Below, piece by piece: positions 413 to 11,744 of a stretch of DNA of 64,000 nucleotides. A model generated the notes under the pieces. That model saw only the letters and a program-made list of their open reading frames with translations. It was not told the origin of the DNA and searched no databases. The stretch is from NCBI GenBank assembly GCA_024704765.1, contig JAKMXF010000297.1, forward strand, positions 1-64,000, written 5' to 3'. The position numbers and the translations under genes were made by a program. The DNA is from Oopsacas minuta (lineage: Eukaryota; Animalia; Porifera). Numbering within the stretch: the first letter of the stretch is position 1; the number at the start of each line of letters is the position of its first letter.

Positions 413-736
413 TTAGAACAACAATCACTTCGTATAATGAATCTGGATCTGCTCCTGAGATATGGAGCTAGTGCCTGGAAAGTACACAATGAACAGCTGG
501 AGCGCATGACTGTCTTAGAGGAAAAACAGCTGAGACAGATCAAACAGAGAATACAAGAAGTTAACTGGGAGCGCAAGAAGCAACAGACAGAGGGTGGAGA
601 GGGTCTTAGTAGGCTATCTGCTGAATGGAATTACCTCGTAAAGGAGAATCTCCAGATTGAGGAGGTATGTCTTCCCCTAGAAAGAGAAATAGAGACCCTC
701 AGAACACTAGTAGAGAACAAGAAACACAACAAATAA
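413..736 (+). CDS. BCAS2: Pre-mRNA splicing factor SPF27/BCAS2, last coding exon (upstream exons not identified in the window)
   Basis: Acceptor TTTAG at 408-412, then LEQQSLRIMNLDLLLRYGASAWKVHNEQLE...IQEVNWERKKQQ...LVKENLQIE, matching the BCAS2 C-terminal coiled coil (LEHQAVRIENLELM..G.NAWK..NE...NW.RK..Q). Stop at 734-736. Confidence 0.85.
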   Translation, partial: LEQQSLRIMNLDLLLRYGASAWKVHNEQLERMTVLEEKQLRQIKQRIQEVNWERKKQQTEGGEGLSRLSAEWNYLVKENLQIEEVCLPLEREIETLRTLVENKKHNK

Positions 737-907: not shown

Positions 908-3900
908 ATGAGTGATCCAATTGAATCTAATAAGGGAGTAACTCCTGATGATAACAGTACAGCTAAGACTTATGAGTTACCTTCTAATGAGACTAAGATA
1001 TCAGACAAAACTTCTACAGTAGATACCGCCCTCTCTTTTGATAAATTATGTGTACATTCTGATTCAGAATCCTCTGGAGATGAAATTACAGCTTTTGATA
1101 GAATTCGTGCATCAAGTGATTCAGATGAAGGAGAAGCTACGAAGACAATAAAAGCGATTTCTGTATCTAAAGAGTTACCTCCAGTACCTGTAACTCTATC
1201 TACCCCGGTTACTGAGACTGAAGAGGTTAAAGTAGAAGAGACATTGCCAGAAGACATGCTTGAAGAAACTGTGAAAAATTCTGAAGTTACGAAAGAGATA
1301 ATCGAGGCCAAATCACATAACAATACTGATGTATCATCTATCCAAGAACCAAACGTTAGTATCCTACGTACACTGTTATGAAGATTATGAATTATTCAAT
1401 TCGTGCTGAATTGTAGAGATTTGGATTTATGTAATTTCTAATTAGAATACACCTGACAAGAAAGTCGTTGTAGAAGATGAACAAAAGAGCAAGGAAGAGA
1501 GCGATAAAATCCAACCTGGTGTATCTAAAGATAAACCCAAATCCCCCGAGGAGAAGAGTAGTATCCAGAGTACAGGCGATTGGAATGAGAGCGAGAAGGG
1601 AAATAAATATTCTCAAAACAAAGATTTTTCTAGAGAGAAAGGAAAACCACGGAAATCCTACCCAGAGGTTTGTCACTTGATTGTATATACTGTTAAATTA
1701 TGTTAATGTAATTTCATGCTAGGATTCCTTTCGAGATGGAAACAAAAGAGAGAGAGGTAAAGGTAGAAGTAATCGTGATGATAGAGGAGTACGGAGAGAA
1801 AATTACGGACATGATGATAGATTCTACGTTTCTCCAGATACGAGGACAAACGAACCTGAGTTCGATTCTAATGTGATACAAGGACGTTCTCCTCCTACTC
1901 GCAGTTGGAAAGGAACAAGAGGAAGGGGAGGAGAGGGCAAATGGAAACATGACAAATTCTATGAAGATGAACAAGGACCTATCGCTGTGGTAATAAGATA
2001 ATGTTTTACCTTTTCTTACGGATATTATATATTAACAATTTACAGGAATCTACTAACAACAGTTATCCTTCCTACTCATCTCCTCAAAGGTTAGTTTTAA
2101 TTAATTTTATTATGATATACTCTAAAATATAATTATTCTATAGTGTTAGTCAGAGTCAATATCCCTATAAGAAGGGGAGAGGACGTGGTAAGAAACAGTA
2201 CAGTGATCAATCCCCCATCCCAGGGTTCCAGCGTAACTCACCCCGACAGGAGAGGAGAGGGAGAGGGAATCCATATAAAGAAGAATCTGATGTATACTCT
2301 TCTAGTACTCGTCCAAATAGAGGGAGAGGAATTAACAGGTACTCATTGTACACAACTACCTATATACATACAATATATTATCAATATGCTGTAGATATAG
2401 TAATTATAAAGAAGATAATTCTGGAGTGTATCACTCAAAACCGATCGTATTTGTCTCTCAGAATAAGAAGATTGAACCTCCAACTGATAGACACAAGGAC
2501 CAGGATAATACTAGGTAACAACTGTCTATGTCTATATATCTTACACGCTTATCATAATCCCGTTAAAATATGCAGGACCTATAATCAAAATGTCAACTCG
2601 ACGTTTGTAATGATTTAAACATTCGCACTAATACAAAAATTAAAATGTTCAGGAGGTCCGTATTTGTTCATGATTCTACATTTATCGATTGGAAGGCTGA
2701 AAAGTTCTTCAAAGATTTCGAGAAGGATCTTCTCCTCTTATTCGTATTCGCCATACAAGCGAATTGTTCTGCTTCTTGATTGTAAATAGATTTTAGAATT
2801 TTTGCACATTCACTTTGTCCATTGTTAATTAAGTTAGTTAGCGTGTCATACTCCTGTATTGTAGGGCCATCAAGGATCATAATCTTTTCACATGAAGCTA
2901 GCTTTATGAGTCTGTCAGTCAGATATATGACTGTATAACCACTACAATGAGTACGTATAATCTTGTGTACTTTGTCCTCTGTATCTTGGTCGAGAGAATT
3001 AATTGCGCTGTCTATGATTAGAAGTTTGTTTTTCTTAAGGAGTGCTCTTGCTAGAGAAAATAGCTTCTTCTGTCCACCACTAAAGTACTGATTGAATTTA
3101 GACATGTCAAATGAGAATTGTTCTGGTAGAGAACTGATTAGTGACTTCAGTTCAGTAACTTCTAGAATTTCCCATATTTCATTGTCAGTAGCTTTATCTA
3201 ATGGGTCTAGATTTAACCGTAGTGAGCCTGGTAACACCATACAATCAATTGGTACAAGAGAAATGCTATCTCTAAGGACATTTTGGTCCATCTTCGTGAT
3301 GTCCGTATTGTCTATTTTAATTGTACCACTGAACTCGCTCAAACACGTGAGGGCAGCCAAAACAGCTGATGCATTCTTACCCACTATGCCAATCGTCTCT
3401 CCGGAGTTGATAGTGAATGATACTTGTTGCAACAAGTTAGGGAGGTAAGGTGCGAAACAGAATATTACGTCATCAAACTCAATAGTTGGATCGATAGGCC
3501 ATTTAGAGTCAACTTTAATCGGTTCATCTCTTTTTGCTTTACACGGTAAATTCCTATAACTTAGAAGTCTCTGTACAGATATCATCTCATTCTCAACCTC
3601 AATACTTAGTAACATCCAGTGTTTTAACATCCATAGAGCGAGGATCATTTGTCCTAGAGTTGTAGCACTTAAGGATTCTTCTTCTGCATGAACTTTAAGA
3701 ATAACAGCTGTTACAAGCGCAAGAGTACATATACCCAATATCCCAACTCTAATACCCACCCAGATATTAACCAGATGGTTACTGTAGTATGCGTTAGAGT
3801 AATTGTCTTGACATTTTATGAAGTGTGACATCAGTTTATTTTGACAGTGATGAGACTGTATAGTCAGTATACCATTGACAGTTATGTTACACTGTGAATA

Positions 3901-6900
3901 GAGAGGTATACATAGTTTGGATTCAAGAGAACGTACTGATCTGGATGTTTTAAGATAGATCCATCTGAATATTAACAACAAACTAACTATGACTATGATG
4001 GAAGGAATTAGGATTACTTGGTTTATAGAGAATGTAAGTGCTATTACCCCCACAGCCTGGAAGGTTAGGACTGTGAAGAAAGTGAAATGGTATGGGAGTA
4101 ATTCGTCACATACTGCTATATCTTGAATAAAACGATTCACTATAGTACCTACGGGAGTGCGGAGGAAGAATGAACTTTTAGCTTTCAGGACTGAATAGAA
4201 CATTCCATCATGTAGAGCATCTGAGCATCTTAACAGAATGAATATTATCATAACGCAGAGCAGCAAGTAGCAAATACAAGATAGAGCAACGAACACCGAT
4301 ACTACGATGTAGGCTTTCCATTCTTGGTTATCGATTATCAAGGAAGCGTTAACTGTTGCATTTCCTGTTCTAACACTTGAGAAACTTGGAGTGCTTGGTG
4401 GTAGGAAGAACCATCCAACGAGAGATATGATACTGCCGCTTTCAGCTAGCAGAACAAGAATTAATAGGAAGTATAGTACAGCTACGTTAGTACCTGACAT
4501 TAAGTATGTTATGTACGTCCTGATTGAGATATTGTGCACTTTCTCGTCTTCCTTCACTTGATAAATCTTTTGCCAGTTATCAATACCATCCATATCCATA
4601 GTTGTGGTGATATTTATAGATTTCTGTTTCAACATTCTGAAATTTCGTATCAAAGATTTTCTACGACTTAACTGATCTACTTTGTTTCCTGATTCTGGAA
4701 TCTCTTCATCGTCACTTAGAACTTTTTGAATCATACAGATAATGTCTATCTCTTCATTCTTCATTTTTATTTCAAACATTACAAGGTTTAGAATTTCTTG
4801 CTGATTAGTTGCAATCAGTACAATTTTATCAGTCAAGACTTCAGTTATCAAATTCTTGAATATTTTAATTGCAGGTTTAAGTTCGATAATGCTAAATACC
4901 TCATCCAATAAGTAGATATCAGCTTTCTTGTAAATTGCCCTAGCGATTGATATCTTCATTGCTAGAGGGCCTTTAATTCCGCCCTCATCCATAACCTGAG
5001 TACTATCAGCAAGATTAGAATATTTGAATTCTTCCTCGATTCCACACAATTTTTTTACTTTTTCATACCATACTTCATCTATTTTCTCACTAAATATTAT
5101 ATTTTCCTTGATATCACCATCAAACAACCATCCTTCTTTCGGTACAAATACTACGGTCCCTTTCTTGTATATTTCGAGATTTTCAGGGATATCCAGTTCG
5201 CCGAATATAGACAGAAGTAAATCCGAGTTTCCGGCAGTGATATTACCTGATATTCCTATGACGTTCTTATTCTCTCCTGCACTTATTATAATTGAATGAG
5301 AGTTCTCGCTCTTTGAACATATTTTGATAAAAGCTTTTTTATCTAATTGGACTAAGGAAGTTCCATTTTTTAGATTCTGTTTCTCTGCTGTTTTAGATTT
5401 GAGTTCGTTATTGTCGCTCTGTCTGGAATTCTTGATAGTTTCGTATTCAGGCGAGTCTAGCAATGCCGCAATCCTCTTGAGAGATAAATTTACTTCTTTA
5501 ATCAAATAGATAGCGTAGTTAAATTCTAGAACTAGCGTTGAGCTCAGTTGTGCAAACATTAAGAACCCTGCATTCACTTGACCAGCTGTGATTTCTTTAT
5601 CAGAGATTATGGAATAAGTTATAGCAGTAAGGTAGATTGAGACAGTAGGTCCTATGAAGAAGAAGAAAAGTTTGAGTGCTCGGATTAGGCTGGCTTTCTG
5701 GAGAAATCTATCTTCTTTGAATTTAGTTTGATAGACAAGTTTGGTTATTGGTTCCTCCCAAGCTAATAGTCTCACGAGATTGAAGTTAGCAACAAGATTT
5801 TGTACAATATCTACTCTCTTGTCTCCATAGTGCAGCATCTTTTTGCGTATTGTTTTAAACTTTTTTGAGAATGAGAGTTGTATTACTGAGATAATAGTTA
5901 GGAATAAGATTCCTGGTATAACGGAGCAGTATAGCTCCAACCGGTTCCACATAAAGAAGATAACTGTTCCCACTTCAATTGGTGCTATCCATAGAATATG
6001 GAGGGTGGCTATACCTTCACGGAATATTTGTGTGTCAGATGATATTAGGTGGATTACATTGAAATCTCGCAATGCTTTACTTTTGATTTTCAACAATTTT
6101 CTGTAGATAATAGATTCGAACACTATCCTCAGATAAGTAGAACTGAAAGCATCAAAGTATGTTTTGAGATTTGAAGTGACCAATTCTCCAAAAGTGGCTC
6201 CTATTAGTACACATGCAGTTAGTGTAGTACTGCAAATTGAAGTTTCCAGATTCAGGGGTGATGTCAATTGATTTGTCGTTATATTTGAATGATTCGAACT
6301 GGATAATACAGTGTAGCTGTTGTTGCAATACATCTTTTGAGTTACGAGGGCTGCTAGTAATAAATCTTTTATCAAATTGAGGGAATGTTCTAGAAACATG
6401 AATACTCCTGTTATAAAGAAGTTGATACAGACAGAAGTAATTAATATCCACTTTAGAATAAGTACTGTGTTCCTATTCCCTGATGTTTGCGTATGTTTCG
6501 AAATGAAATCCCAATCATGTTCGATTTTCCTATTTATATTAGCTCCTCTAAGCTGTTGTCTTACTTTACATAGATCTTGGTCTTTTAAATTCCTACGGAC
6601 TCCTTTGATAAATATCATATCTATTAAAAAGTCTGCAAAAATTTCCTTGAATCTGATTACACAATTCATTTTTCAATTCTTTAATTATCAGGATGAGAGA
6701 ATTAAAATCTTTATTATCAGGATGACCATTCTGGTATTTATATTAATTTGCTGTCAGTATGGTTTCTAACTATAGCTATCACATCGCAACACATTTGTAC
6801 TTTTATCAGATCCTTTGAACACTTCTAATCAATCTCAAAAGCTCTCATCATTTCAGGATGATTAATCCTTGATATCCCATCCAATAAGATCTATTGTATT

Positions 6901-8579
6901 ACACTATAATTCTCTTTTCCACAAGATTCTGTAGATTTCTTTAGTCTTATCAACTTATTCAAATGTTTTAGAACTACCTTGAACGTAGATGATGCTGTCA
7001 ATAGCGATTATATTCAACCTAGTTCTAGTACTGCTCTTCCCTCCATCTCTGTCTTTTCTACAAAGCCTGAAATTGGTTTGTTATTTATTTATCAGCTAAC
7101 TCCTATTTTGTGATATTTTTATAGTTCGAGGATCAATTAGAATTTGTCATCTTGATATTTATTGATTTGTTTAAGAAATTACGTCACACGAACTCTGAGA
7201 CCACACATATTTTAACTATAAATTTAGAGTGTGAATACGAAAAATATGGTGAAATCAAATACTTTCATAATTTTGTTTCCAAGACATGCAGCAACCTAAA
7301 CGTGCTCCTCAGATGAAATACGGGCCTTACAACAACAAAAAGGATACTGAGAAGTACACTACTACCTCGAACTCCTCGTATACAGGGTTAGGTAGAGGAA
7401 AGGGAAAGATTTTGCATCCGGTCGCGTTACTCCAGAGAGGGCAGCAATATAAAAGACGTAAGTAAGGTAGCAACTTAAGTGGAAGGGGCAATGCAAACTG
7501 CCCACCTTTCTCTTAATTTACTTTAACAAGAAATTTTAGATTTCTATTTTGTCAGTAGTATATTGGTTGTACCTCTATCTAGCTACTGAACCTGTCAATT
7601 ATGAGTATGAGAAAGAGTTTGTACCAAAGAAAGACCCGAAAGAACCTATCTCCCTTACTCCTGATTCAAATCCTTCATTTCCCTTTACTAAATCTGAACC
7701 TCTACATAAACCCGAGCGTTATTCTACTCAGAGAATGAAGCAAGCACAATCAGCTGATCATAACAATGTAACAACTTCTAACGTGGGTATTCCTGTTATG
7801 AATGCTAACTCTCCTAATCCTGGATTAAACAGACCTCCTAGCACTCAAGACCAAGGTACTTAAGTAATATAATACATAATATATATTATTAATACTAATA
7901 ACATTATTTATTTATTTATTTCTCTTAACAAAGGGTACAACGCATCTATGAGAATAGGAGAGCACCCACAACAAGAAACACGATCTTCCATGATGGATGT
8001 ACCGTATTCTGAATTCTATCCCACTCCATACAAGGTATGGCTTTACAAACTATAAACCTTATGTATACTTATATGTTATTTTCTGTATTTTAGGAAGAGA
8101 TGGTAGGAAATCAAATGTCTGCAATGCATCCTTTCAACATGATGCCAGGTAATATGTCTATAAATGTGTAAATACAAGATATTATCTATCTATCTATATA
8201 TATATATATATGTTATTGCTAGATTACATGATATCACCTGATGTCATGAAGGAAGGGGACTTCCAACAGATGCAGTTCCCTCCTTTCATCCCACAAGAGA
8301 TGACAATGAACATGAAGGGAGCACCCAATATGATGGGAGGTAGTTGCTTCAAAATACTAGTTTGATTTGATACACGTTTTTATGACAATTTATTATTTCA
8401 CACCAGGTATTCCTTACATAAGCAATCCTCCTGAGTATACGATGGGAAGTGAAGTTCCACCCAATTTACAATCTGATTTATTTGTTCCAATGCAAAGGTA
8501 AAGCAGTAAAAACACTAATTATATAAATGAATACAATCATTAATAAGATTTATTTCATAGTTATTATCCTCCAATCTAA
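908..8579 (+). CDS. CASC3: CASC3/Barentsz/MLN51-like exon-junction-complex protein, about 15 exons, host of a nested ABC gene
   Basis: Phase-consistent GT-AG exons: 908-1354, 1446-1667, 1723-1989, 2046-2089, 2144-2338, 2395-2514, 2576-2602, [intron 2603-6971], 6972-7075, 7284-7457, 7583-7855, 7934-8034, 8094-8148, 8223-8339, 8407-~8497, 8561-8579. The protein has an acidic N-terminus, a Btz-like HDDR...GKWKHDKFYEDEQGP segment (cf. GRWEHDKFREDEQAP), a downstream RYSTQR motif (cf. RYSSQR) and a P/M/Q-rich tail ending YYPPI. Confidence 0.8.
2668..6669 (-). CDS. ABCC4/MRP4-like short ABC-C protein (TMD1-NBD1-TMD2-NBD2), single exon, degenerate NBDs, nested in CASC3 intron
   Basis: 1333-aa uninterrupted ORF. 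ABCC-type motifs include LHILWIAP, WEEP, FFLRTPVGTIVNRF, SVQRLLSY, WP..PTIEF and LRLNLDP. No TMD0. Walker A, Q-loop, Walker B and H-loop are altered. Confidence 0.9.
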   Translation of the reverse strand: MNCVIRFKEIFADFLIDMIFIKGVRRNLKDQDLCKVRQQLRGANINRKIEHDWDFISKHTQTSGNRNTVLILKWILITSVCINFFITGVFMFLEHSLNLIKDLLLAALVTQKMYCNNSYTVLSSSNHSNITTNQLTSPLNLETSICSTTLTACVLIGATFGELVTSNLKTYFDAFSSTYLRIVFESIIYRKLLKIKSKALRDFNVIHLISSDTQIFREGIATLHILWIAPIEVGTVIFFMWNRLELYCSVIPGILFLTIISVIQLSFSKKFKTIRKKMLHYGDKRVDIVQNLVANFNLVRLLAWEEPITKLVYQTKFKEDRFLQKASLIRALKLFFFFIGPTVSIYLTAITYSIISDKEITAGQVNAGFLMFAQLSSTLVLEFNYAIYLIKEVNLSLKRIAALLDSPEYETIKNSRQSDNNELKSKTAEKQNLKNGTSLVQLDKKAFIKICSKSENSHSIIISAGENKNVIGISGNITAGNSDLLLSIFGELDIPENLEIYKKGTVVFVPKEGWLFDGDIKENIIFSEKIDEVWYEKVKKLCGIEEEFKYSNLADSTQVMDEGGIKGPLAMKISIARAIYKKADIYLLDEVFSIIELKPAIKIFKNLITEVLTDKIVLIATNQQEILNLVMFEIKMKNEEIDIICMIQKVLSDDEEIPESGNKVDQLSRRKSLIRNFRMLKQKSINITTTMDMDGIDNWQKIYQVKEDEKVHNISIRTYITYLMSGTNVAVLYFLLILVLLAESGSIISLVGWFFLPPSTPSFSSVRTGNATVNASLIIDNQEWKAYIVVSVFVALSCICYLLLCVMIIFILLRCSDALHDGMFYSVLKAKSSFFLRTPVGTIVNRFIQDIAVCDELLPYHFTFFTVLTFQAVGVIALTFSINQVILIPSIIVIVSLLLIFRWIYLKTSRSVRSLESKLCIPLYSQCNITVNGILTIQSHHCQNKLMSHFIKCQDNYSNAYYSNHLVNIWVGIRVGILGICTLALVTAVILKVHAEEESLSATTLGQMILALWMLKHWMLLSIEVENEMISVQRLLSYRNLPCKAKRDEPIKVDSKWPIDPTIEFDDVIFCFAPYLPNLLQQVSFTINSGETIGIVGKNASAVLAALTCLSEFSGTIKIDNTDITKMDQNVLRDSISLVPIDCMVLPGSLRLNLDPLDKATDNEIWEILEVTELKSLISSLPEQFSFDMSKFNQYFSGGQKKLFSLARALLKKNKLLIIDSAINSLDQDTEDKVHKIIRTHCSGYTVIYLTDRLIKLASCEKIMILDGPTIQEYDTLTNLINNGQSECAKILKSIYNQEAEQFACMANTNKRRRSFSKSLKNFSAFQSINVES

Positions 8580-8790: not shown

Positions 8791-9047
8791 CAAGCGATTA
8801 CTGCTAGGAGTTTATCTAAAATGCACCTCATGGGTTGTGATGTGATACTATGTTACTACCAGGTCTGATCATTCATTATTATTTGACCTATTTTTGTATA
8901 CCAATTTTCTTCTATCATATTTTGCTACACATATTCATGGGATTTACATTTCGGAATTACATTTCAATCATTACACAGTAATTACTTCAATAATTTGCAA
9001 GTGTGGTATATTTAAAATTAAGGTATTAAACGATAATTTAGTCTGTG

Positions 9048-11744
9048 ATGTTGAATATTAAGCTGAACTATGTCTTCTCCAATCTGTGTGGATGTATGTA
9101 CAAGCAAGGTAACATTATATTCACACCAGATGGAAATTCTGTACTCAGTCCTGTGGGGAACAGAGTAACACAGTTTGACCTTAAGAACAATAAATCTACA
9201 ACTTTTCCTTTCCAAAATAGGAAGAATATTTCTCGAATCGCTCTCTCTCCAGACGGAGATCTACTTCTTAGTGTTGATGACGACGGAAGACTTATTTTAG
9301 TTAATCTTTATCGCAAAGTTGTACTACAACATATCAATCTTAAACTTCCAGTAAAAGACATAAAATTTAGTCCAGACGGTTCGCTAATTTCTGTCACACA
9401 TGGTAGAATACTAGATATTTGGTATAGTCCTACAAAGGTGAAGAAGTTTGCTTCTTTCCAGCGTTTCAACAGTTTTCGTGGTCATAGTGATAAGATAACT
9501 TGCATTGACTGGTCTTCTGATTCTGAGTTTGTTGCTACTGGTTCGGCTGATATGACCGTGAGAGTATTTTCAATGCATAGAATATACGGATATAGATCTA
9601 TCCGTTTAGCTGGACATAGAAATACACTGGTAGGATGTTTCTTTGAGAAGAATTCCCTCAGTTTGTATACTTTATGTAAAGGGTCTGTTTTACTGTATTG
9701 GAGTTGTGATGTTAGTTTAGAAGAGGCTAGAGAGTTAAGGGAAAGAGCTGTAACAGAGGAAGGAAGAAAACTGGGATTTGAGCAATCTAGTGAAAAAGAT
9801 TTGTTCTTCTTTGATAAAGAACGAGACGAGGAAGAAGCTAGTAGTTCTGATGAAGATAATAAATACGAATCTATTGCTAAGAGAATAAAGAAATCTAATT
9901 CGATAGTATGGACACGATCTGATAAACATATACTTAATACAGAGCATCACTCTACTATCAGTTCTGCTTGTTATAGCTCTCATATCCGTATATTGGTTGT
10001 AGGATTTAAGAATGGAGTGTTTGTGTTATATGAAACTCCATCTCTTGTTCAAATACACTCCCTGTCTGTTTCTCAGCACGCGATTAATTCTGCGGCTCTC
10101 AACACGTCAGGACAATGGTTAGCTTTGGCTTCTAAGACTCTAGGACAGCTAGTTGTTTGGGAATGGTCCTCTGAAACGTTCATTCTGAAGCAGCAAGGTC
10201 ACTCCCTGGGTATGTCTTGTCTCACTTACTCTCCTGATGGAGAGGTTATTGTAACAGGTGGACAGGACGGTAAAGTCAAGTTATGGAGCACTGCGACTAG
10301 TTTCTGTTTCGCTACTTTTGGGGAACATACCGGTCCCGTTACTGGGGTGTGCTATAACGCAGTTGGACAAGTAATAATATCTGCCTCCCTTGATGGGACA
10401 GTCCGTGCATTCGATACAAAGCGTTATAGGAATTTCCGAACCTATACCTCCCCAGATCCAGCTCAATTCTCCTCGCTAGCTGTTGACTTTTCAGGAGAAC
10501 TGATTTGTGCGGGGTCACAGGACACTTTTGAGATTTATCTCTGGTCGCTTGAGACCGGAAAGCTCCTAGAGATTTTGAGGGGGCACACGGGTCCGATCAG
10601 CTGGCTACAATTCAGCCCTCTGGGTTCCCTCCTCGCTTCCAGTTCTTGGGATAAGAGCTACCGTCTCTGGGACCCGATCAATCCTGAGGGGAATAACGAA
10701 CATGTCGAATTTGTCACAGAAGCAGTCGCTCTCTGTTACAGTCCAAATGGGAAGGAATTAGCTGTCAGTACACTAGATGCACAAATAACCTTCTGGAATG
10801 TTGAAGAATCACTTCAAACAGGAAGTATAGAATGTAGAAGAGACATCTGGAGCGGTAGGAGAACAGAAGATCTGGTTACCACTAGACATCTTGCTAGCAC
10901 CAAATGTTTCACTTCAATCGCTTACACAGCTGATGGTAGTTGTTTGCTTGCAGGAGGAAGATCTAAATATATATGTATTTATGATGTACCCACCAAGATA
11001 CTGCTACGTAGATACCAGATCAGTGGAAACCGATCTTATGACGCAATGCAGAGGTATCTGGACAGCAGGAAGATGACAGAGGCAGGACCTGAAGATCTGA
11101 TAGAAATATCATCTGAGTCTGAGAGTGAAGATATTCAGTTACCAGGAGTGGTTAAAGGGGAACATAGCAGTCGTAAGACACGTCCTGAAATCGAGACAAG
11201 GGGTGTTCAGTTCTCTCCAACAGGTCTGTCGTGGGCAGCTGTTACAACTGATGGTCTTATGGTATACTCTTTGGATCAAGGATTGACATTCGATCCGTTT
11301 GAGTTAGGTACTGATATTACTCCAGGAGCTGTCATACAAGCTATATTAAGTGAGCATTATATGGAGGCTCTAGTGTATAGTGTACATTTGAACGAGCAAT
11401 CCCTGTTACAACGAGCTATTGAGAGTGTACCTACTGATCAGATAAAGTTGATTATGAGTACTCTACCATTCAGATATATTCCTAAACTCATCCCACACTT
11501 CGCACACTTTCTCAGCTCCACCACACATCTACAATTCTATATGCAATGGATTCAATCTCTACTGTTATATCATGGACGTAGTATTCAAGGAGAGATCGTA
11601 ACATTAGCTCCCGGACTCACTGCGCTACAGAACTCTATCCATGAGAAGATGGCAGATCTCTCCTCTCTAACTGATTCTAACAAATTTAGACTTGACTACT
11701 TTATCATGGTTCAACAGAGGGATAAAGCTGTTAATAATACGTAG
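9048..11744 (+). CDS. PWP2: Periodic tryptophan protein 2 (WD40, U3 processome UTP1), single exon
   Basis: N-terminus FSNLCG.MYKQGNIIFTPDGNSVLSPVGNRVTQFDLKNNKS is characteristic of PWP2. Multiple WD40 repeats and a Utp12-type C-terminus. First ATG is 9048 (the track starts at GTG 9045). Confidence 0.95.
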   Translation: MLNIKLNYVFSNLCGCMYKQGNIIFTPDGNSVLSPVGNRVTQFDLKNNKSTTFPFQNRKNISRIALSPDGDLLLSVDDDGRLILVNLYRKVVLQHINLKLPVKDIKFSPDGSLISVTHGRILDIWYSPTKVKKFASFQRFNSFRGHSDKITCIDWSSDSEFVATGSADMTVRVFSMHRIYGYRSIRLAGHRNTLVGCFFEKNSLSLYTLCKGSVLLYWSCDVSLEEARELRERAVTEEGRKLGFEQSSEKDLFFFDKERDEEEASSSDEDNKYESIAKRIKKSNSIVWTRSDKHILNTEHHSTISSACYSSHIRILVVGFKNGVFVLYETPSLVQIHSLSVSQHAINSAALNTSGQWLALASKTLGQLVVWEWSSETFILKQQGHSLGMSCLTYSPDGEVIVTGGQDGKVKLWSTATSFCFATFGEHTGPVTGVCYNAVGQVIISASLDGTVRAFDTKRYRNFRTYTSPDPAQFSSLAVDFSGELICAGSQDTFEIYLWSLETGKLLEILRGHTGPISWLQFSPLGSLLASSSWDKSYRLWDPINPEGNNEHVEFVTEAVALCYSPNGKELAVSTLDAQITFWNVEESLQTGSIECRRDIWSGRRTEDLVTTRHLASTKCFTSIAYTADGSCLLAGGRSKYICIYDVPTKILLRRYQISGNRSYDAMQRYLDSRKMTEAGPEDLIEISSESESEDIQLPGVVKGEHSSRKTRPEIETRGVQFSPTGLSWAAVTTDGLMVYSLDQGLTFDPFELGTDITPGAVIQAILSEHYMEALVYSVHLNEQSLLQRAIESVPTDQIKLIMSTLPFRYIPKLIPHFAHFLSSTTHLQFYMQWIQSLLLYHGRSIQGEIVTLAPGLTALQNSIHEKMADLSSLTDSNKFRLDYFIMVQQRDKAVNNT

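What the first reader, a model, noticed from the sequence alone, without database searches (positions are those of the whole stretch)
2668..6669. Intact 1333-aa ABCC4-like protein with both ATPase sites apparently dead (pseudo-ATPase)
Compared with recalled ABCC4 motifs, NBD1 has Walker A GNITAGNS (Lys lost, about 5224-5258), Q-loop VPKE (Q>K), signature IKGPLAMK instead of LSGGQ, and H-loop ATNQ (H>N). NBD2 has Walker A GKNAS (GAGKSS deleted, about 3361-3390), Q-loop VPID (Q>I), Walker B IIDSA (catalytic E>S, about 3001-3024) and H-loop LTDR (H>D). ABCC proteins normally have one degenerate site, not two. An open 4-kb ORF with normal TMDs suggests ongoing selection for a non-pumping role. Basic-Ser motifs (RRKS in the linker, RRRS at the C-terminus) hint at phospho-regulation. 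Inference: a channel, regulatory subunit or scaffold, conceptually parallel to CFTR or SUR but further degenerated.
Basis: partly seen in the sequence, partly recalled or inferred. Interest (0 to 1): 0.78.

Follow-up and report, generated by a model that had tools for sequence, protein, structure and literature searches.

The report
Conserved ABCC4-like protein without working ATP sites
Glass sponges keep, under strong selection, a full-length relative of the drug pump ABCC4 in which both ATP-burning sites have been replaced by new, frozen residues, so it almost certainly no longer works as an ATP-driven pump.

Summary
Window 2668-6669 (-) is an intact 1333-aa ABCC4-like ORF (PDB ABCC4, E 1.7e-138). 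Both nucleotide sites lack their key residues. NBD1 has Walker A Lys>Asn, Q-loop Gln>Lys, signature IKGPL and H-loop His>Asn. NBD2 has a 3-residue P-loop deletion that removes Gly-Lys, plus Q-loop Gln>Ile, catalytic Glu>Ser and His>Asp.

It is not a pseudogene. Seven syntenic, intact orthologues (63-76% identity) in other glass-sponge assemblies carry the same changes. dN/dS is 0.12-0.15 overall and 0.06-0.10 in NBD2. Of 53 invariant motif residues, 49 use different synonymous codons between species. It evolves more slowly than canonical ABCC4-like paralogues in the same genomes.

An exhaustive search of 1.84 billion representative proteins found no relative above about 30% identity outside this clade. 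The 110 nearest full-length ABCCs compared motif by motif are canonical at both sites apart from isolated single-motif deviations; none has both sites dead.

Being intronless and nested in a CASC3-like intron is ordinary for glass sponges.

Function is inferred: an ATP-independent channel, facilitator or regulatory role. Expression evidence is suggestive only.

The parts
2668..6669 (-). Single-exon CDS of the 1333-aa ABCC4-like protein (stop codon at 2668-2670)
   Evidence: The N-terminal Met is conserved in all 8 orthologues.
6460..6669 (-). N-terminal L0/lasso region (residues 1-70); no TMD0
   Evidence: The alignment to ABCC4 starts at ABCC4 residue 27. The lasso consensus G-x-[KR]-x-L...DL is kept.
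5455..6459 (-). TMD1 (residues about 71-405). TM6 carries Ser376 in place of ABCC4 Arg362, and an invariant Glu382 in place of Phe368.
   Evidence: dN/dS 0.08-0.20
4720..5352 (-). NBD1 (residues about 440-650), degenerate
   Evidence: dN/dS 0.12-0.15; pLDDT mostly 78-95
5221..5256 (-). NBD1 Walker A remnant G[IV]SGNITA[GS]N[SL][DE] (Lys>Asn; fourth Gly>Thr)
4954..4986 (-). NBD1 signature remnant (IKGPLAMK or INSCLTMK instead of LSGGQKAR)
4525..4719 (-). NBD1-TMD2 linker (residues 651-715). It is variable and predicted disordered, with a conserved [RK]-Q-[KR]-S site (Ser684).
   Evidence: dN/dS up to 0.48
3550..4524 (-). TMD2 (residues about 716-1040). TM12 reads LKHWMLLS in place of the canonical FQWxVRQS, so Arg998 of ABCC4 is lost.
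   Evidence: dN/dS 0.05-0.13
2815..3492 (-). NBD2 (residues about 1060-1285), degenerate and yet the most constrained domain
   Evidence: dN/dS 0.06-0.10
3361..3390 (-). NBD2 Walker A remnant GIVGKN[AS][SP]A, three residues shorter than GIVGRTGAGKSS. The model shows only a 3-residue loop between the strand and the helix.
3001..3024 (-). NBD2 Walker B [LI]LI[IM]DSA (catalytic Glu>Ser, invariant)
2911..2931 (-). NBD2 H-loop V[IL]YLTDR (His>Asp, invariant)
2671..2814 (-). C-terminal tail with conserved NTNxRR[RN][STY]F[STV]KS. It ends in VN[VF][ED][IL] in 7 of 8 species.
2515..6971 (+). A 4457-nt GT..AG intron of the plus-strand host gene (CASC3/Barentsz-like) that contains the whole ABC gene in antisense
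   Evidence: Spliced joint in RNA run X1. Splice dinucleotides read. Weak Btz match, E 0.022. Flanking host exons are conserved on both sides of the ABC gene in all 7 orthologous loci.

Best explanation
This is a functional, glass-sponge-specific descendant of an ABCC4-type exporter that has become a pseudo-ATPase.

Shown: the whole TMD1-NBD1-TMD2-NBD2 scaffold and the NBD-TMD coupling elements are kept under strong purifying selection. Nearly every residue that contacts nucleotide in a canonical ABCC has been replaced by a different residue, and the replacements are themselves frozen. The affected elements are the Walker A Lys in both NBDs, the P-loop length in NBD2, both Q-loop Gln, both H-loop His, the NBD2 catalytic Glu and the NBD1 signature. 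Two arginines that are conserved in canonical ABCC cavities, matching ABCC4 Arg362 and Arg998, are also gone. Arg998 contacts the substrate carboxylate in ABCC4.

Inferred: the protein cannot run an ATP-hydrolysis-driven transport cycle. The normally catalytic site 2 cannot bind ATP at all. The protein most likely works as an ATP-independent membrane device: a channel or facilitator, or a ligand-binding or regulatory subunit. Its NBDs would serve as a nucleotide-free interaction or gating module. Conserved basophilic Ser sites in the linker and the C-terminal tail may control it.
For: (1) The motif losses are confirmed residue by residue against ABCC4.

(2) Seven intact single-exon orthologues lie in the same gene neighbourhood (WD40/Utp12 - ABC - BCAS2 - thioredoxin - PigN) in seven other assemblies. 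They share the same substitutions.

(3) Nei-Gojobori dN/dS for unsaturated pairs is 0.12-0.15 over the whole gene, 0.06-0.10 in NBD2 and 0.12-0.15 in NBD1.

(4) Of 53 invariant residues in the ten motif windows, 49 are encoded by two or more synonymous codons across species.

(5) In a relative about 4% diverged (run X5), 25 of the 39 listed CDS differences are synonymous. The CDS indels are 6 and 3 nt, while the flanking indels are 1 nt. All 6 allelic differences within the sample are synonymous.

(6) In the same species pairs it evolves more slowly than canonical ABCC4-like paralogues: dN 0.094 against 0.155, and identity 66% against 55%.

(7) Of 158 columns that are at least 85% conserved in canonical ABCC4-likes, 77 are changed in all 8 members. 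These cluster in the NBD nucleotide-site motifs. The 81 that are kept include both Walker B Asp, the D-loop Asp and the coupling-helix motif NRF..D.

(8) The AlphaFold2 model is confident (pLDDT 82.4, pTM 0.81) with both NBDs folded, and the NBD2 P-loop is reduced to a 3-residue turn.

(9) An RNA-type run holds one contig that spans the whole ORF.
Against: No biochemical data exist, so loss of ATP binding and hydrolysis is inferred from sequence.

Site 1 keeps a P-loop of normal length (GxxxxG-N-S in 5 of 8 species), the Walker B Asp-Glu/Asp and the partner SxGQ signature. Non-hydrolytic binding of a nucleotide or another phosphate ligand there cannot be excluded.

The RNA evidence comes from contigs. 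Strand, transcript ends and origin (own mRNA or unspliced host pre-mRNA) cannot be told apart.

Nothing tested distinguishes a channel from a facilitator or a regulatory subunit. The AlphaFold model's closer match to NBD-engaged states (TM 0.82-0.85 against 0.62-0.64 for wide-open apo forms) is not evidence of the real conformation.
Confidence: 0.75

Rival explanations
1. It is still nucleotide-regulated. Site 1 (NBD1 P-loop with the NBD2 signature) still binds ATP or another nucleotide without hydrolysing it. The ligand acts as a structural glue or a sensor, so the protein is a ligand-gated channel or regulator rather than nucleotide-free.
For: Site 1 keeps more of its elements than site 2: the P-loop length, Walker B Asp589 with Glu or Asp at 590, and invariant Ser1197, Gly1199 and Gln1200 of the NBD2 signature. 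From general knowledge, the degenerate site 1 of ABCCs normally holds ATP for minutes without hydrolysis (review PMC7756269).
Against: The Walker A Lys is Asn in all 8 species. The Gly before it is Ser in 3 species. The position of the A-loop aromatic residue is Ile or Cys. Q-loop Gln>Lys and H-loop His>Asn/Ser.
Confidence: 0.15
2. It is still a primary active pump that hydrolyses ATP through an unconventional catalytic arrangement.
For: The full exporter architecture and the coupling helices are conserved. Four species carry Asp-Glu in the NBD1 Walker B.
Against: At the normally catalytic site 2, every element is gone: the P-loop Gly-Lys is deleted, and the catalytic Glu, the H-loop His, the Q-loop Gln and the partner signature are replaced. 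Site 1 lacks the Walker A Lys and the H-loop His. The Glu at NBD1 Walker B is Asp in the other four species, so it is not essential.
Confidence: 0.04
3. It is a decaying or dispensable gene copy: a retro-pseudogene or relaxed duplicate that merely happens to stay open.
For: It is intronless and nested in another gene's intron. It sits on a very long stem branch (1.9-2.7 substitutions per site).
Against: A 4-kb ORF is open in 8 species whose synonymous sites are saturated between clades (dS above 2). dN/dS is 0.12-0.15. Only in-frame indels occur in the CDS. Intronless and nested genes are the norm in glass sponges (PMC10282587), and the canonical paralogues are intronless too.
Confidence: 0.01

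Closest known systems
ABCC4 / MRP4 (short ABCC exporters without TMD0)
   Same: The domain order is the same, with an L0 lasso and no TMD0. It gives the best sequence match (PDB E 1.7e-138; nearest representatives are ABCC4 and ABCC4-like proteins of frog, cnidarian, arthropods and choanoflagellates). It also gives the best structural match (TM 0.80-0.85). The coupling-helix and D-loop residues are kept.
   Different: Identity is only about 25-29%. Both nucleotide sites are degenerate, instead of site 1 only. Pocket residues Arg998, Trp995, Arg362 and Phe368 of human MRP4 (PMC10202912) correspond to Leu, His, Ser and Glu.
CFTR (ABCC7)
   Same: It is an ABCC scaffold diverted from pumping. It has basophilic Ser motifs in the inter-domain linker and a conserved C-terminal tail.
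   Different: CFTR binds ATP at both sites and hydrolyses it at site 2. It has a phospho-regulatory R domain of about 200 residues, whereas the linker here is about 65 residues with one conserved site. CFTR scores lower than ABCC4 in sequence. No evidence of ion conduction exists here.
Sulfonylurea receptors SUR1/SUR2 (ABCC8/9)
   Same: They are ABCC proteins used as regulatory subunits rather than transporters.
   Different: SUR has a TMD0 that docks onto Kir6 and an Mg-nucleotide-competent NBD2. Both are absent here. SUR gives the lowest sequence scores among ABCCs.
Exporters with one degenerate site (TAP1/2, TM287/288, TmrAB, ABCB11 and all ABCCs)
   Same: The catalytic Glu, H-loop His and signature are replaced at a composite site, while the scaffold is retained.
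   Different: Those proteins always keep one consensus site that drives the cycle. The 2020 review of degenerate sites nowhere uses the phrase 'two degenerate' (PMC7756269). Here the consensus site is the more thoroughly destroyed of the two.

Membership tests
ABC type IV exporter / ABCC subfamily, ABCC4-like (by descent and fold) | TMD1-NBD1-TMD2-NBD2 architecture with ABC_membrane and ABC_tran domains | tested here: met
   Pfam PF00664 and PF00005, two stretches each. The AlphaFold2 model has pTM 0.81 and TM 0.80-0.85 to MRP4 structures.
ABC type IV exporter / ABCC subfamily, ABCC4-like (by descent and fold) | Closer to ABCC4 and the short MRPs than to other ABCC members; L0 lasso present and no TMD0 | tested here: met
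   PDB scores are ABCC4 467 bits, against MRP1 359, CFTR 315, ABCC5 305 and SUR 267. Trees place it inside the ABCC4-like group with 99-100 SH-aLRT support. The N-terminus aligns from ABCC4 residue 27.
ABC transporter as an ATP-driven pump (functional membership) | Walker A GxxGxGK[ST] with Lys in at least the consensus-site NBD (NBD2) | tested here: not met
   NBD2 reads GKNA-SA with a 3-residue deletion. NBD1 reads GNITAGNS. Both hold in all 8 orthologues.
ABC transporter as an ATP-driven pump (functional membership) | Walker B catalytic Glu, H-loop His and Q-loop Gln in NBD2, and an LSGGQ signature in NBD1 (consensus site 2) | tested here: not met
   Glu>Ser, His>Asp, Gln>Ile/Val, and signature IKGPL or INSCL.
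ABC transporter as an ATP-driven pump (functional membership) | Measurable ATP binding, ATP hydrolysis or ATP-dependent transport | not testable with these tools
   This needs recombinant protein.
CFTR-type channel | Long R domain with multiple PKA sites, ATP-competent sites, and an anion pore lined by basic residues | tested here: not met
   The linker is about 65 residues with one conserved basic-Ser site. The ATP sites are degenerate. The conserved TM6 and TM12 arginines are lost. Conduction itself is not testable here.
SUR-type regulatory subunit | TMD0 domain and a Mg-nucleotide-binding NBD2 | tested here: not met
   No TMD0: the protein starts at the lasso. The NBD2 P-loop is deleted.
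Processed pseudogene / decaying duplicate | Disrupted frame or dN/dS near 1, and no conserved orthologues | tested here: not met
   The ORF is intact in 8 species. dN/dS is 0.12-0.15. Synteny is conserved.

The most novel reading that the evidence does not exclude
This is a natural ABC exporter scaffold that works with no nucleotide at all. Its two NBDs have been rewired so that the former ATP sites make direct, possibly phosphorylation-controlled, protein contacts. That would turn an ABCC4-type pump into a gated channel or facilitator (or a ligand-sensing subunit) with a remodelled, less cationic cavity. It would be an innovation confined to glass sponges.
Probability: 0.25. Interest if true: 0.85.

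Novelty: new variant of a known kind. Interest (0 to 1): 0.62.

Why it matters
By established knowledge, ABC exporters need at least one consensus ATP site. Even the 'broken' family members CFTR and SUR keep nucleotide binding. I found no described full-length exporter with both sites degenerate, but that search was limited.

A full-length ABCC that has lost both sites would be a natural experiment. It has been conserved across deeply diverged glass sponges at least as tightly as its ATP-competent paralogues, with NBD2 as its most constrained domain. It could show what the ABC scaffold, and NBDs in particular, can do without ATP.

It gives structural biologists a defined target: do the NBDs associate without nucleotide, and what fills the former sites? 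It also adds a clear case to the catalogue of pseudoenzymes. Practical limits are that the function is unknown and that the host animals are hard to work with.

Tried and rejected
**Pseudogene or young retrocopy.** Rejected by the conservation and dN/dS results.

**Retrogene origin inferred from being intronless and nested.** Not supportable. Canonical ABCC4-like paralogues in the same assemblies are also single-exon. The Aphrocallistes genome paper reports 12,409 single-exon transcripts and 2,432 nested genes (PMC10282587).

**Expression.** The run search listed no run on record as RNA. Run X1 proved to be RNA because it shows GT..AG joints. Only contigs are held, so strand, transcript ends and the difference between an ABC mRNA and unspliced host pre-mRNA cannot be resolved. 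My attempt to estimate depth in the neighbouring 208-nt host intron was unreliable because the depths of overlapping contigs are summed.

**TM12 mapping.** A PDB search with a TM11-12 fragment returned only YCF1. I mapped TM12 through the multiple alignment and through the ABCC4 numbering. Whether Trp995 matches His1017 (ungapped) or Trp1018 (one-residue gap) stays ambiguous. Arg998 is lost under either alignment.

**Representative search.** I reran it with residues 140-1310.

**Origin.** The best tree joins the dead clade to the glass-sponge canonical families with support of only 11. An earlier sister grouping with a chytrid protein is long-branch attraction. The duplication node is unresolved.

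**Literature.** Searches for an ABC exporter with two degenerate sites found none. The library is incomplete, so this is weak evidence of novelty.

**Host gene.** Its exons were searched one by one.


Full report
**What is there.** The minus strand of window 2668-6669 carries one uninterrupted ORF of 1333 codons. Pfam finds two ABC_membrane and two ABC_tran stretches. Against all PDB chains the best relative is human or bovine ABCC4/MRP4 (E 1.7e-138, aligned over residues 16-1302). It scores ahead of MRP1, YCF1, ABCC2/3, CFTR, ABCC5 and SUR. The alignment starts at ABCC4 residue 27, so the protein has the L0 lasso but no TMD0. Earlier notes of this scan identify the genome as a glass sponge. 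That agrees with a named Oopsacas minuta protein that groups with canonical paralogues found in the same assemblies as the orthologues.

**The motifs.**
- NBD1: Walker A GNITAGNS against GPVGAGKS, so the Lys is Asn and the fourth Gly is Thr. Q-loop VPKE against VSQQ. Signature IKGPLAM against LSGGQKA. H-loop ATNQ against VTHQ.
- NBD2: GIVGKNA---SAVLAAL against GIVGRTGAGKSSLISAL, a three-residue deletion that removes the Gly-Lys of the P-loop. Q-loop VPID against IPQE. Walker B IIDSA against IIDEA. H-loop LTDR against IAHR.
- Three details need correcting. NBD1 keeps an intact Walker B (Asp589 invariant, followed by Glu or Asp). NBD2 keeps its signature FS[GAQ]GQ. The A-loop aromatic residue is kept in NBD2 (Phe) but lost in NBD1.
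- The composite sites therefore differ. The normally catalytic site 2 (NBD2 P-loop with the NBD1 signature) has lost every element. The normally degenerate site 1 has lost the Lys, Gln, His and the aromatic residue, but keeps its loop length, the Walker B acid pair and the partner signature.

**It is conserved, not decaying.** A word-indexed search of 5.8 billion proteins returned seven full-length relatives at 63-76% identity, then nothing above 30%.
- Each relative lies on a long contig of a different ENA assembly.
- Each sits in the same neighbourhood: WD40/Utp12 gene, ABC gene, BCAS2, thioredoxin-domain gene, PigN. They are one-to-one orthologues.
- All are single open frames of 1319-1328 codons, and all carry the same motif replacements.

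**Selection.** Pairwise Nei-Gojobori estimates give dS above 2 or saturated between the three subclades, so the species are deeply diverged.
- For the unsaturated pairs, dN/dS is 0.12-0.15 over the whole gene. By region it is 0.06-0.10 in NBD2, 0.12-0.15 in NBD1, 0.08-0.20 in the TMDs, and up to 0.48 in the inter-domain linker.
- Within the ten motif windows, 53 residues are invariant, and 49 of them are encoded by two or more synonymous codons among the species. The replacement residues themselves are therefore under purifying selection.
- A ninth, closely related organism (run X5, about 4% divergence) shows 25 synonymous against 14 non-synonymous changes among the 39 differences listed within the CDS. 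Its CDS indels are 6 and 3 nt, while the indels just outside the CDS are 1 nt.
- Six differences between the window and the reads of its own sample are all synonymous.

**Comparison with competent paralogues.** The same glass-sponge assemblies also encode canonical ABCC4-like proteins with intact GxxGxGKS, LSGGQ, DEAT and AHR motifs.
- These include P0143 in ERZ25072730, P0299 in ERZ25072740, three copies in ERZ20067936, and a named Oopsacas minuta protein.
- They are single-exon too.
- For the same species pairs the degenerate protein changes more slowly. dN is 0.094 against 0.155, and 0.25 against 0.37-0.38. Identity is 83% against 75%, and 66% against 54-55%. dN/dS is similar, 0.126 against 0.138.
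- One caveat: the canonical family has lineage-specific duplications, so strict orthology of those pairs is not guaranteed.

**Distribution and origin.** An exhaustive HMMER scan of 1.84 billion cluster representatives, using residues 140-1310, found the family's own representative at 1661 bits. The next best normal-length hit scored 459 bits at 29% identity.
- The nearest named relatives are ABCC4 or ABCC4-like proteins of a frog, a hydrozoan, arthropods, echinoderms, a tunicate and choanoflagellates.
- I compared the 110 nearest full-length hits motif by motif. They are canonical at both sites apart from isolated single-motif deviations or truncated models, and none has both sites dead. The clearest exception is P0209, which is partly degenerate at site 2 (GRNGLEKS; LSESR).
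- A motif count over all 149 listed hits found none that lacks everything, as this family does.
- Maximum-likelihood trees place the eight sequences as a fully supported clade inside the ABCC4-like group. Its stem is 1.9 (LG+G4) to 2.7 (LG+C20) substitutions per site, while the branches within the clade are only 0.03-0.26.
- The best tree joins it to the glass-sponge canonical families, but with negligible support (11).
- The history is a burst of change on the stem followed by long stasis. Whether the duplication was specific to hexactinellids is unresolved.

**What changed and what did not.** Among 158 alignment columns that are at least 85% conserved in 56 canonical ABCC4-likes, 81 are kept unchanged in all eight members and 77 are changed in all eight.
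- The changes concentrate in the nucleotide-site motifs of both NBDs.
- The kept residues include both Walker B aspartates, the signature-helix RA.Y, the D-loop Asp, the X-loop Thr and the coupling-helix motif NRF..D...P. The transmission interface between the NBDs and the TMDs is therefore preserved.
- In the membrane domains, the two arginines that are conserved in ABCC cavities are replaced by invariant Ser376 and Leu1020. They correspond to human MRP4 Arg362 and Arg998, and Arg998 contacts the substrate carboxylate (PMC10202912).
- Phe368 corresponds to an invariant Glu382. Gln994-Trp995 corresponds to Lys/Arg1016-His1017 in the ungapped alignment. Phe324 is kept.
- TM6 and TM12 are almost invariant within the family. 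The cavity has been remodelled and then fixed, not abandoned.
- N-glycosylation sequons persist in the first and fourth extracellular loops of all species, although their positions drift. This fits a correctly inserted secretory-pathway membrane protein.

**Structure.** AlphaFold2 was run on a 64-sequence alignment. It gives mean pLDDT 82.4 and pTM 0.81.
- Both NBDs are confidently folded.
- The low-confidence segments are the TMD1-NBD1 connector, the NBD1-TMD2 linker and one extracellular loop.
- In NBD2 only three residues separate the beta-strand from the helix, where a canonical P-loop would wrap the phosphates.
- The model is closest to ATP-bound or occluded MRP4 structures (8iza, 8bwo, 8j3z and 8swn; TM 0.82-0.85) and to substrate-bound narrow forms (0.79-0.80). 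It is further from wide inward-open apo forms (0.62-0.64).
- This is compatible with NBDs that associate without nucleotide, but AlphaFold's choice of state is not evidence.

**Genomic setting and expression.** Laying public runs on 1700-7600 showed that run X1 is RNA.
- X1 has GT..AG joints over 54-56-nt introns. It also has a joint that skips 4457 nt. Reading the sequence places that intron at 2515-6971 on the plus strand.
- The whole ABC gene therefore lies antisense inside one intron of a plus-strand host gene. One exon of that host gene gives a weak Btz (CASC3/Barentsz) match (E 0.022).
- Host exons flank the ABC gene on the opposite strand in all seven orthologous loci, so the nesting is as old as the family.
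- The published Aphrocallistes genome reports about 63% single-exon transcripts and 2,432 nested genes. It notes that the O. minuta annotation detected only 83 nested genes, and that low counts in some genomes probably reflect gene-modelling settings (PMC10282587).
- Being intronless and nested is thus ordinary in this clade. It also plausibly explains why no O. minuta member appears among the annotated proteins.
- X1 contains one 4402-nt contig (2597-6998) that covers the entire ORF, at about a quarter of the depth of the host exons.
- That is consistent with transcription of the ABC gene. Contigs, however, cannot give strand or transcript ends, and unspliced host pre-mRNA is not excluded.

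**Interpretation.** The data show a selected protein that retains the ABCC exporter scaffold and its inter-domain coupling, but lacks the chemistry for ATP binding at site 2 and for hydrolysis at either site.
- I infer that it is not a primary active pump (confidence about 0.9 for no hydrolysis-driven cycle). It most likely acts as an ATP-independent channel or facilitator, or as a ligand-binding or regulatory subunit.
- NBD2 is the most constrained domain and its replacement residues are frozen. This points to a new role for the former nucleotide sites, such as direct NBD-NBD or partner contacts, rather than mere loss.
- The conserved [RK]-Q-[KR]-S in the disordered linker and RR[RN][STY]F in the tail are candidate regulatory phosphorylation sites.
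- Whether site 1 still holds a nucleotide is the main open sub-question.
- Literature searches found no described ABC exporter with two degenerate sites. This is limited evidence, because the library is incomplete.

Noticed in passing
window 908-2514 and 6972-7863 (+): This is the host gene, with a weak Btz/CASC3 match. It has very short introns (54-56 nt) and one 4457-nt intron that contains the ABC gene. Only 153 nt separate the intron start from the ABC stop codon, and 302 nt separate the ABC ATG from the intron end. The nesting is conserved in 7 other species.
   Followed up: partly
window 437-736 (+): C-terminal exon of BCAS2/SPF27 (Pfam E 2e-25), directly upstream of the host gene. The same neighbour appears in all orthologous loci.
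   Followed up: partly
window 9045-11744 (+): An 899-aa single-exon protein with WD40 double propellers and a Utp12 domain (WDR3/UTP12-like). It is transcribed divergently from the ABC gene, and this is conserved in all loci.
   Followed up: partly
L008 8001-11927; L009; L010-L012: Canonical, ATP-site-intact ABCC4-like genes of glass sponges are also single-exon. They are locally duplicated: several cluster members lie on one contig, and ERZ20067936 has three copies. A second ENA group (P0305-P0319, 36-39% identical) clusters with them. Their source organisms were not verified.
   Followed up: partly
protein P0209: This is another ABCC4-like representative with a partly degenerate site 2 (NBD2 Walker A GRNGLEKS, NBD1 signature LSESR). 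It could be a gene-model error, a pseudogene or an independent case of decay at site 2.
   Followed up: no
window 2917: RNA run X1 reads T where the window and two DNA runs of the same sample read A. The change is synonymous (Thr1251). At five other sites the DNA runs differ from both the window and X1. Most simply these are two alleles, not editing.
   Followed up: partly
window 2671-2700 (C-terminus of the protein): Seven of eight orthologues end in V-N-[VF]-[ED]-[IL], a hydrophobic-x-hydrophobic ending that resembles a class II PDZ ligand. This species ends in V-E-S.
   Followed up: no
Oopsacas minuta (no locus fetched): The canonical-family tree puts O. minuta nearer to the species of P0006 and P0007 than the species of P0008 is. 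By bracketing it should therefore carry the degenerate gene. No NCBI protein of it was found. The likely cause is an unannotated nested gene, but loss is possible.
   Followed up: no
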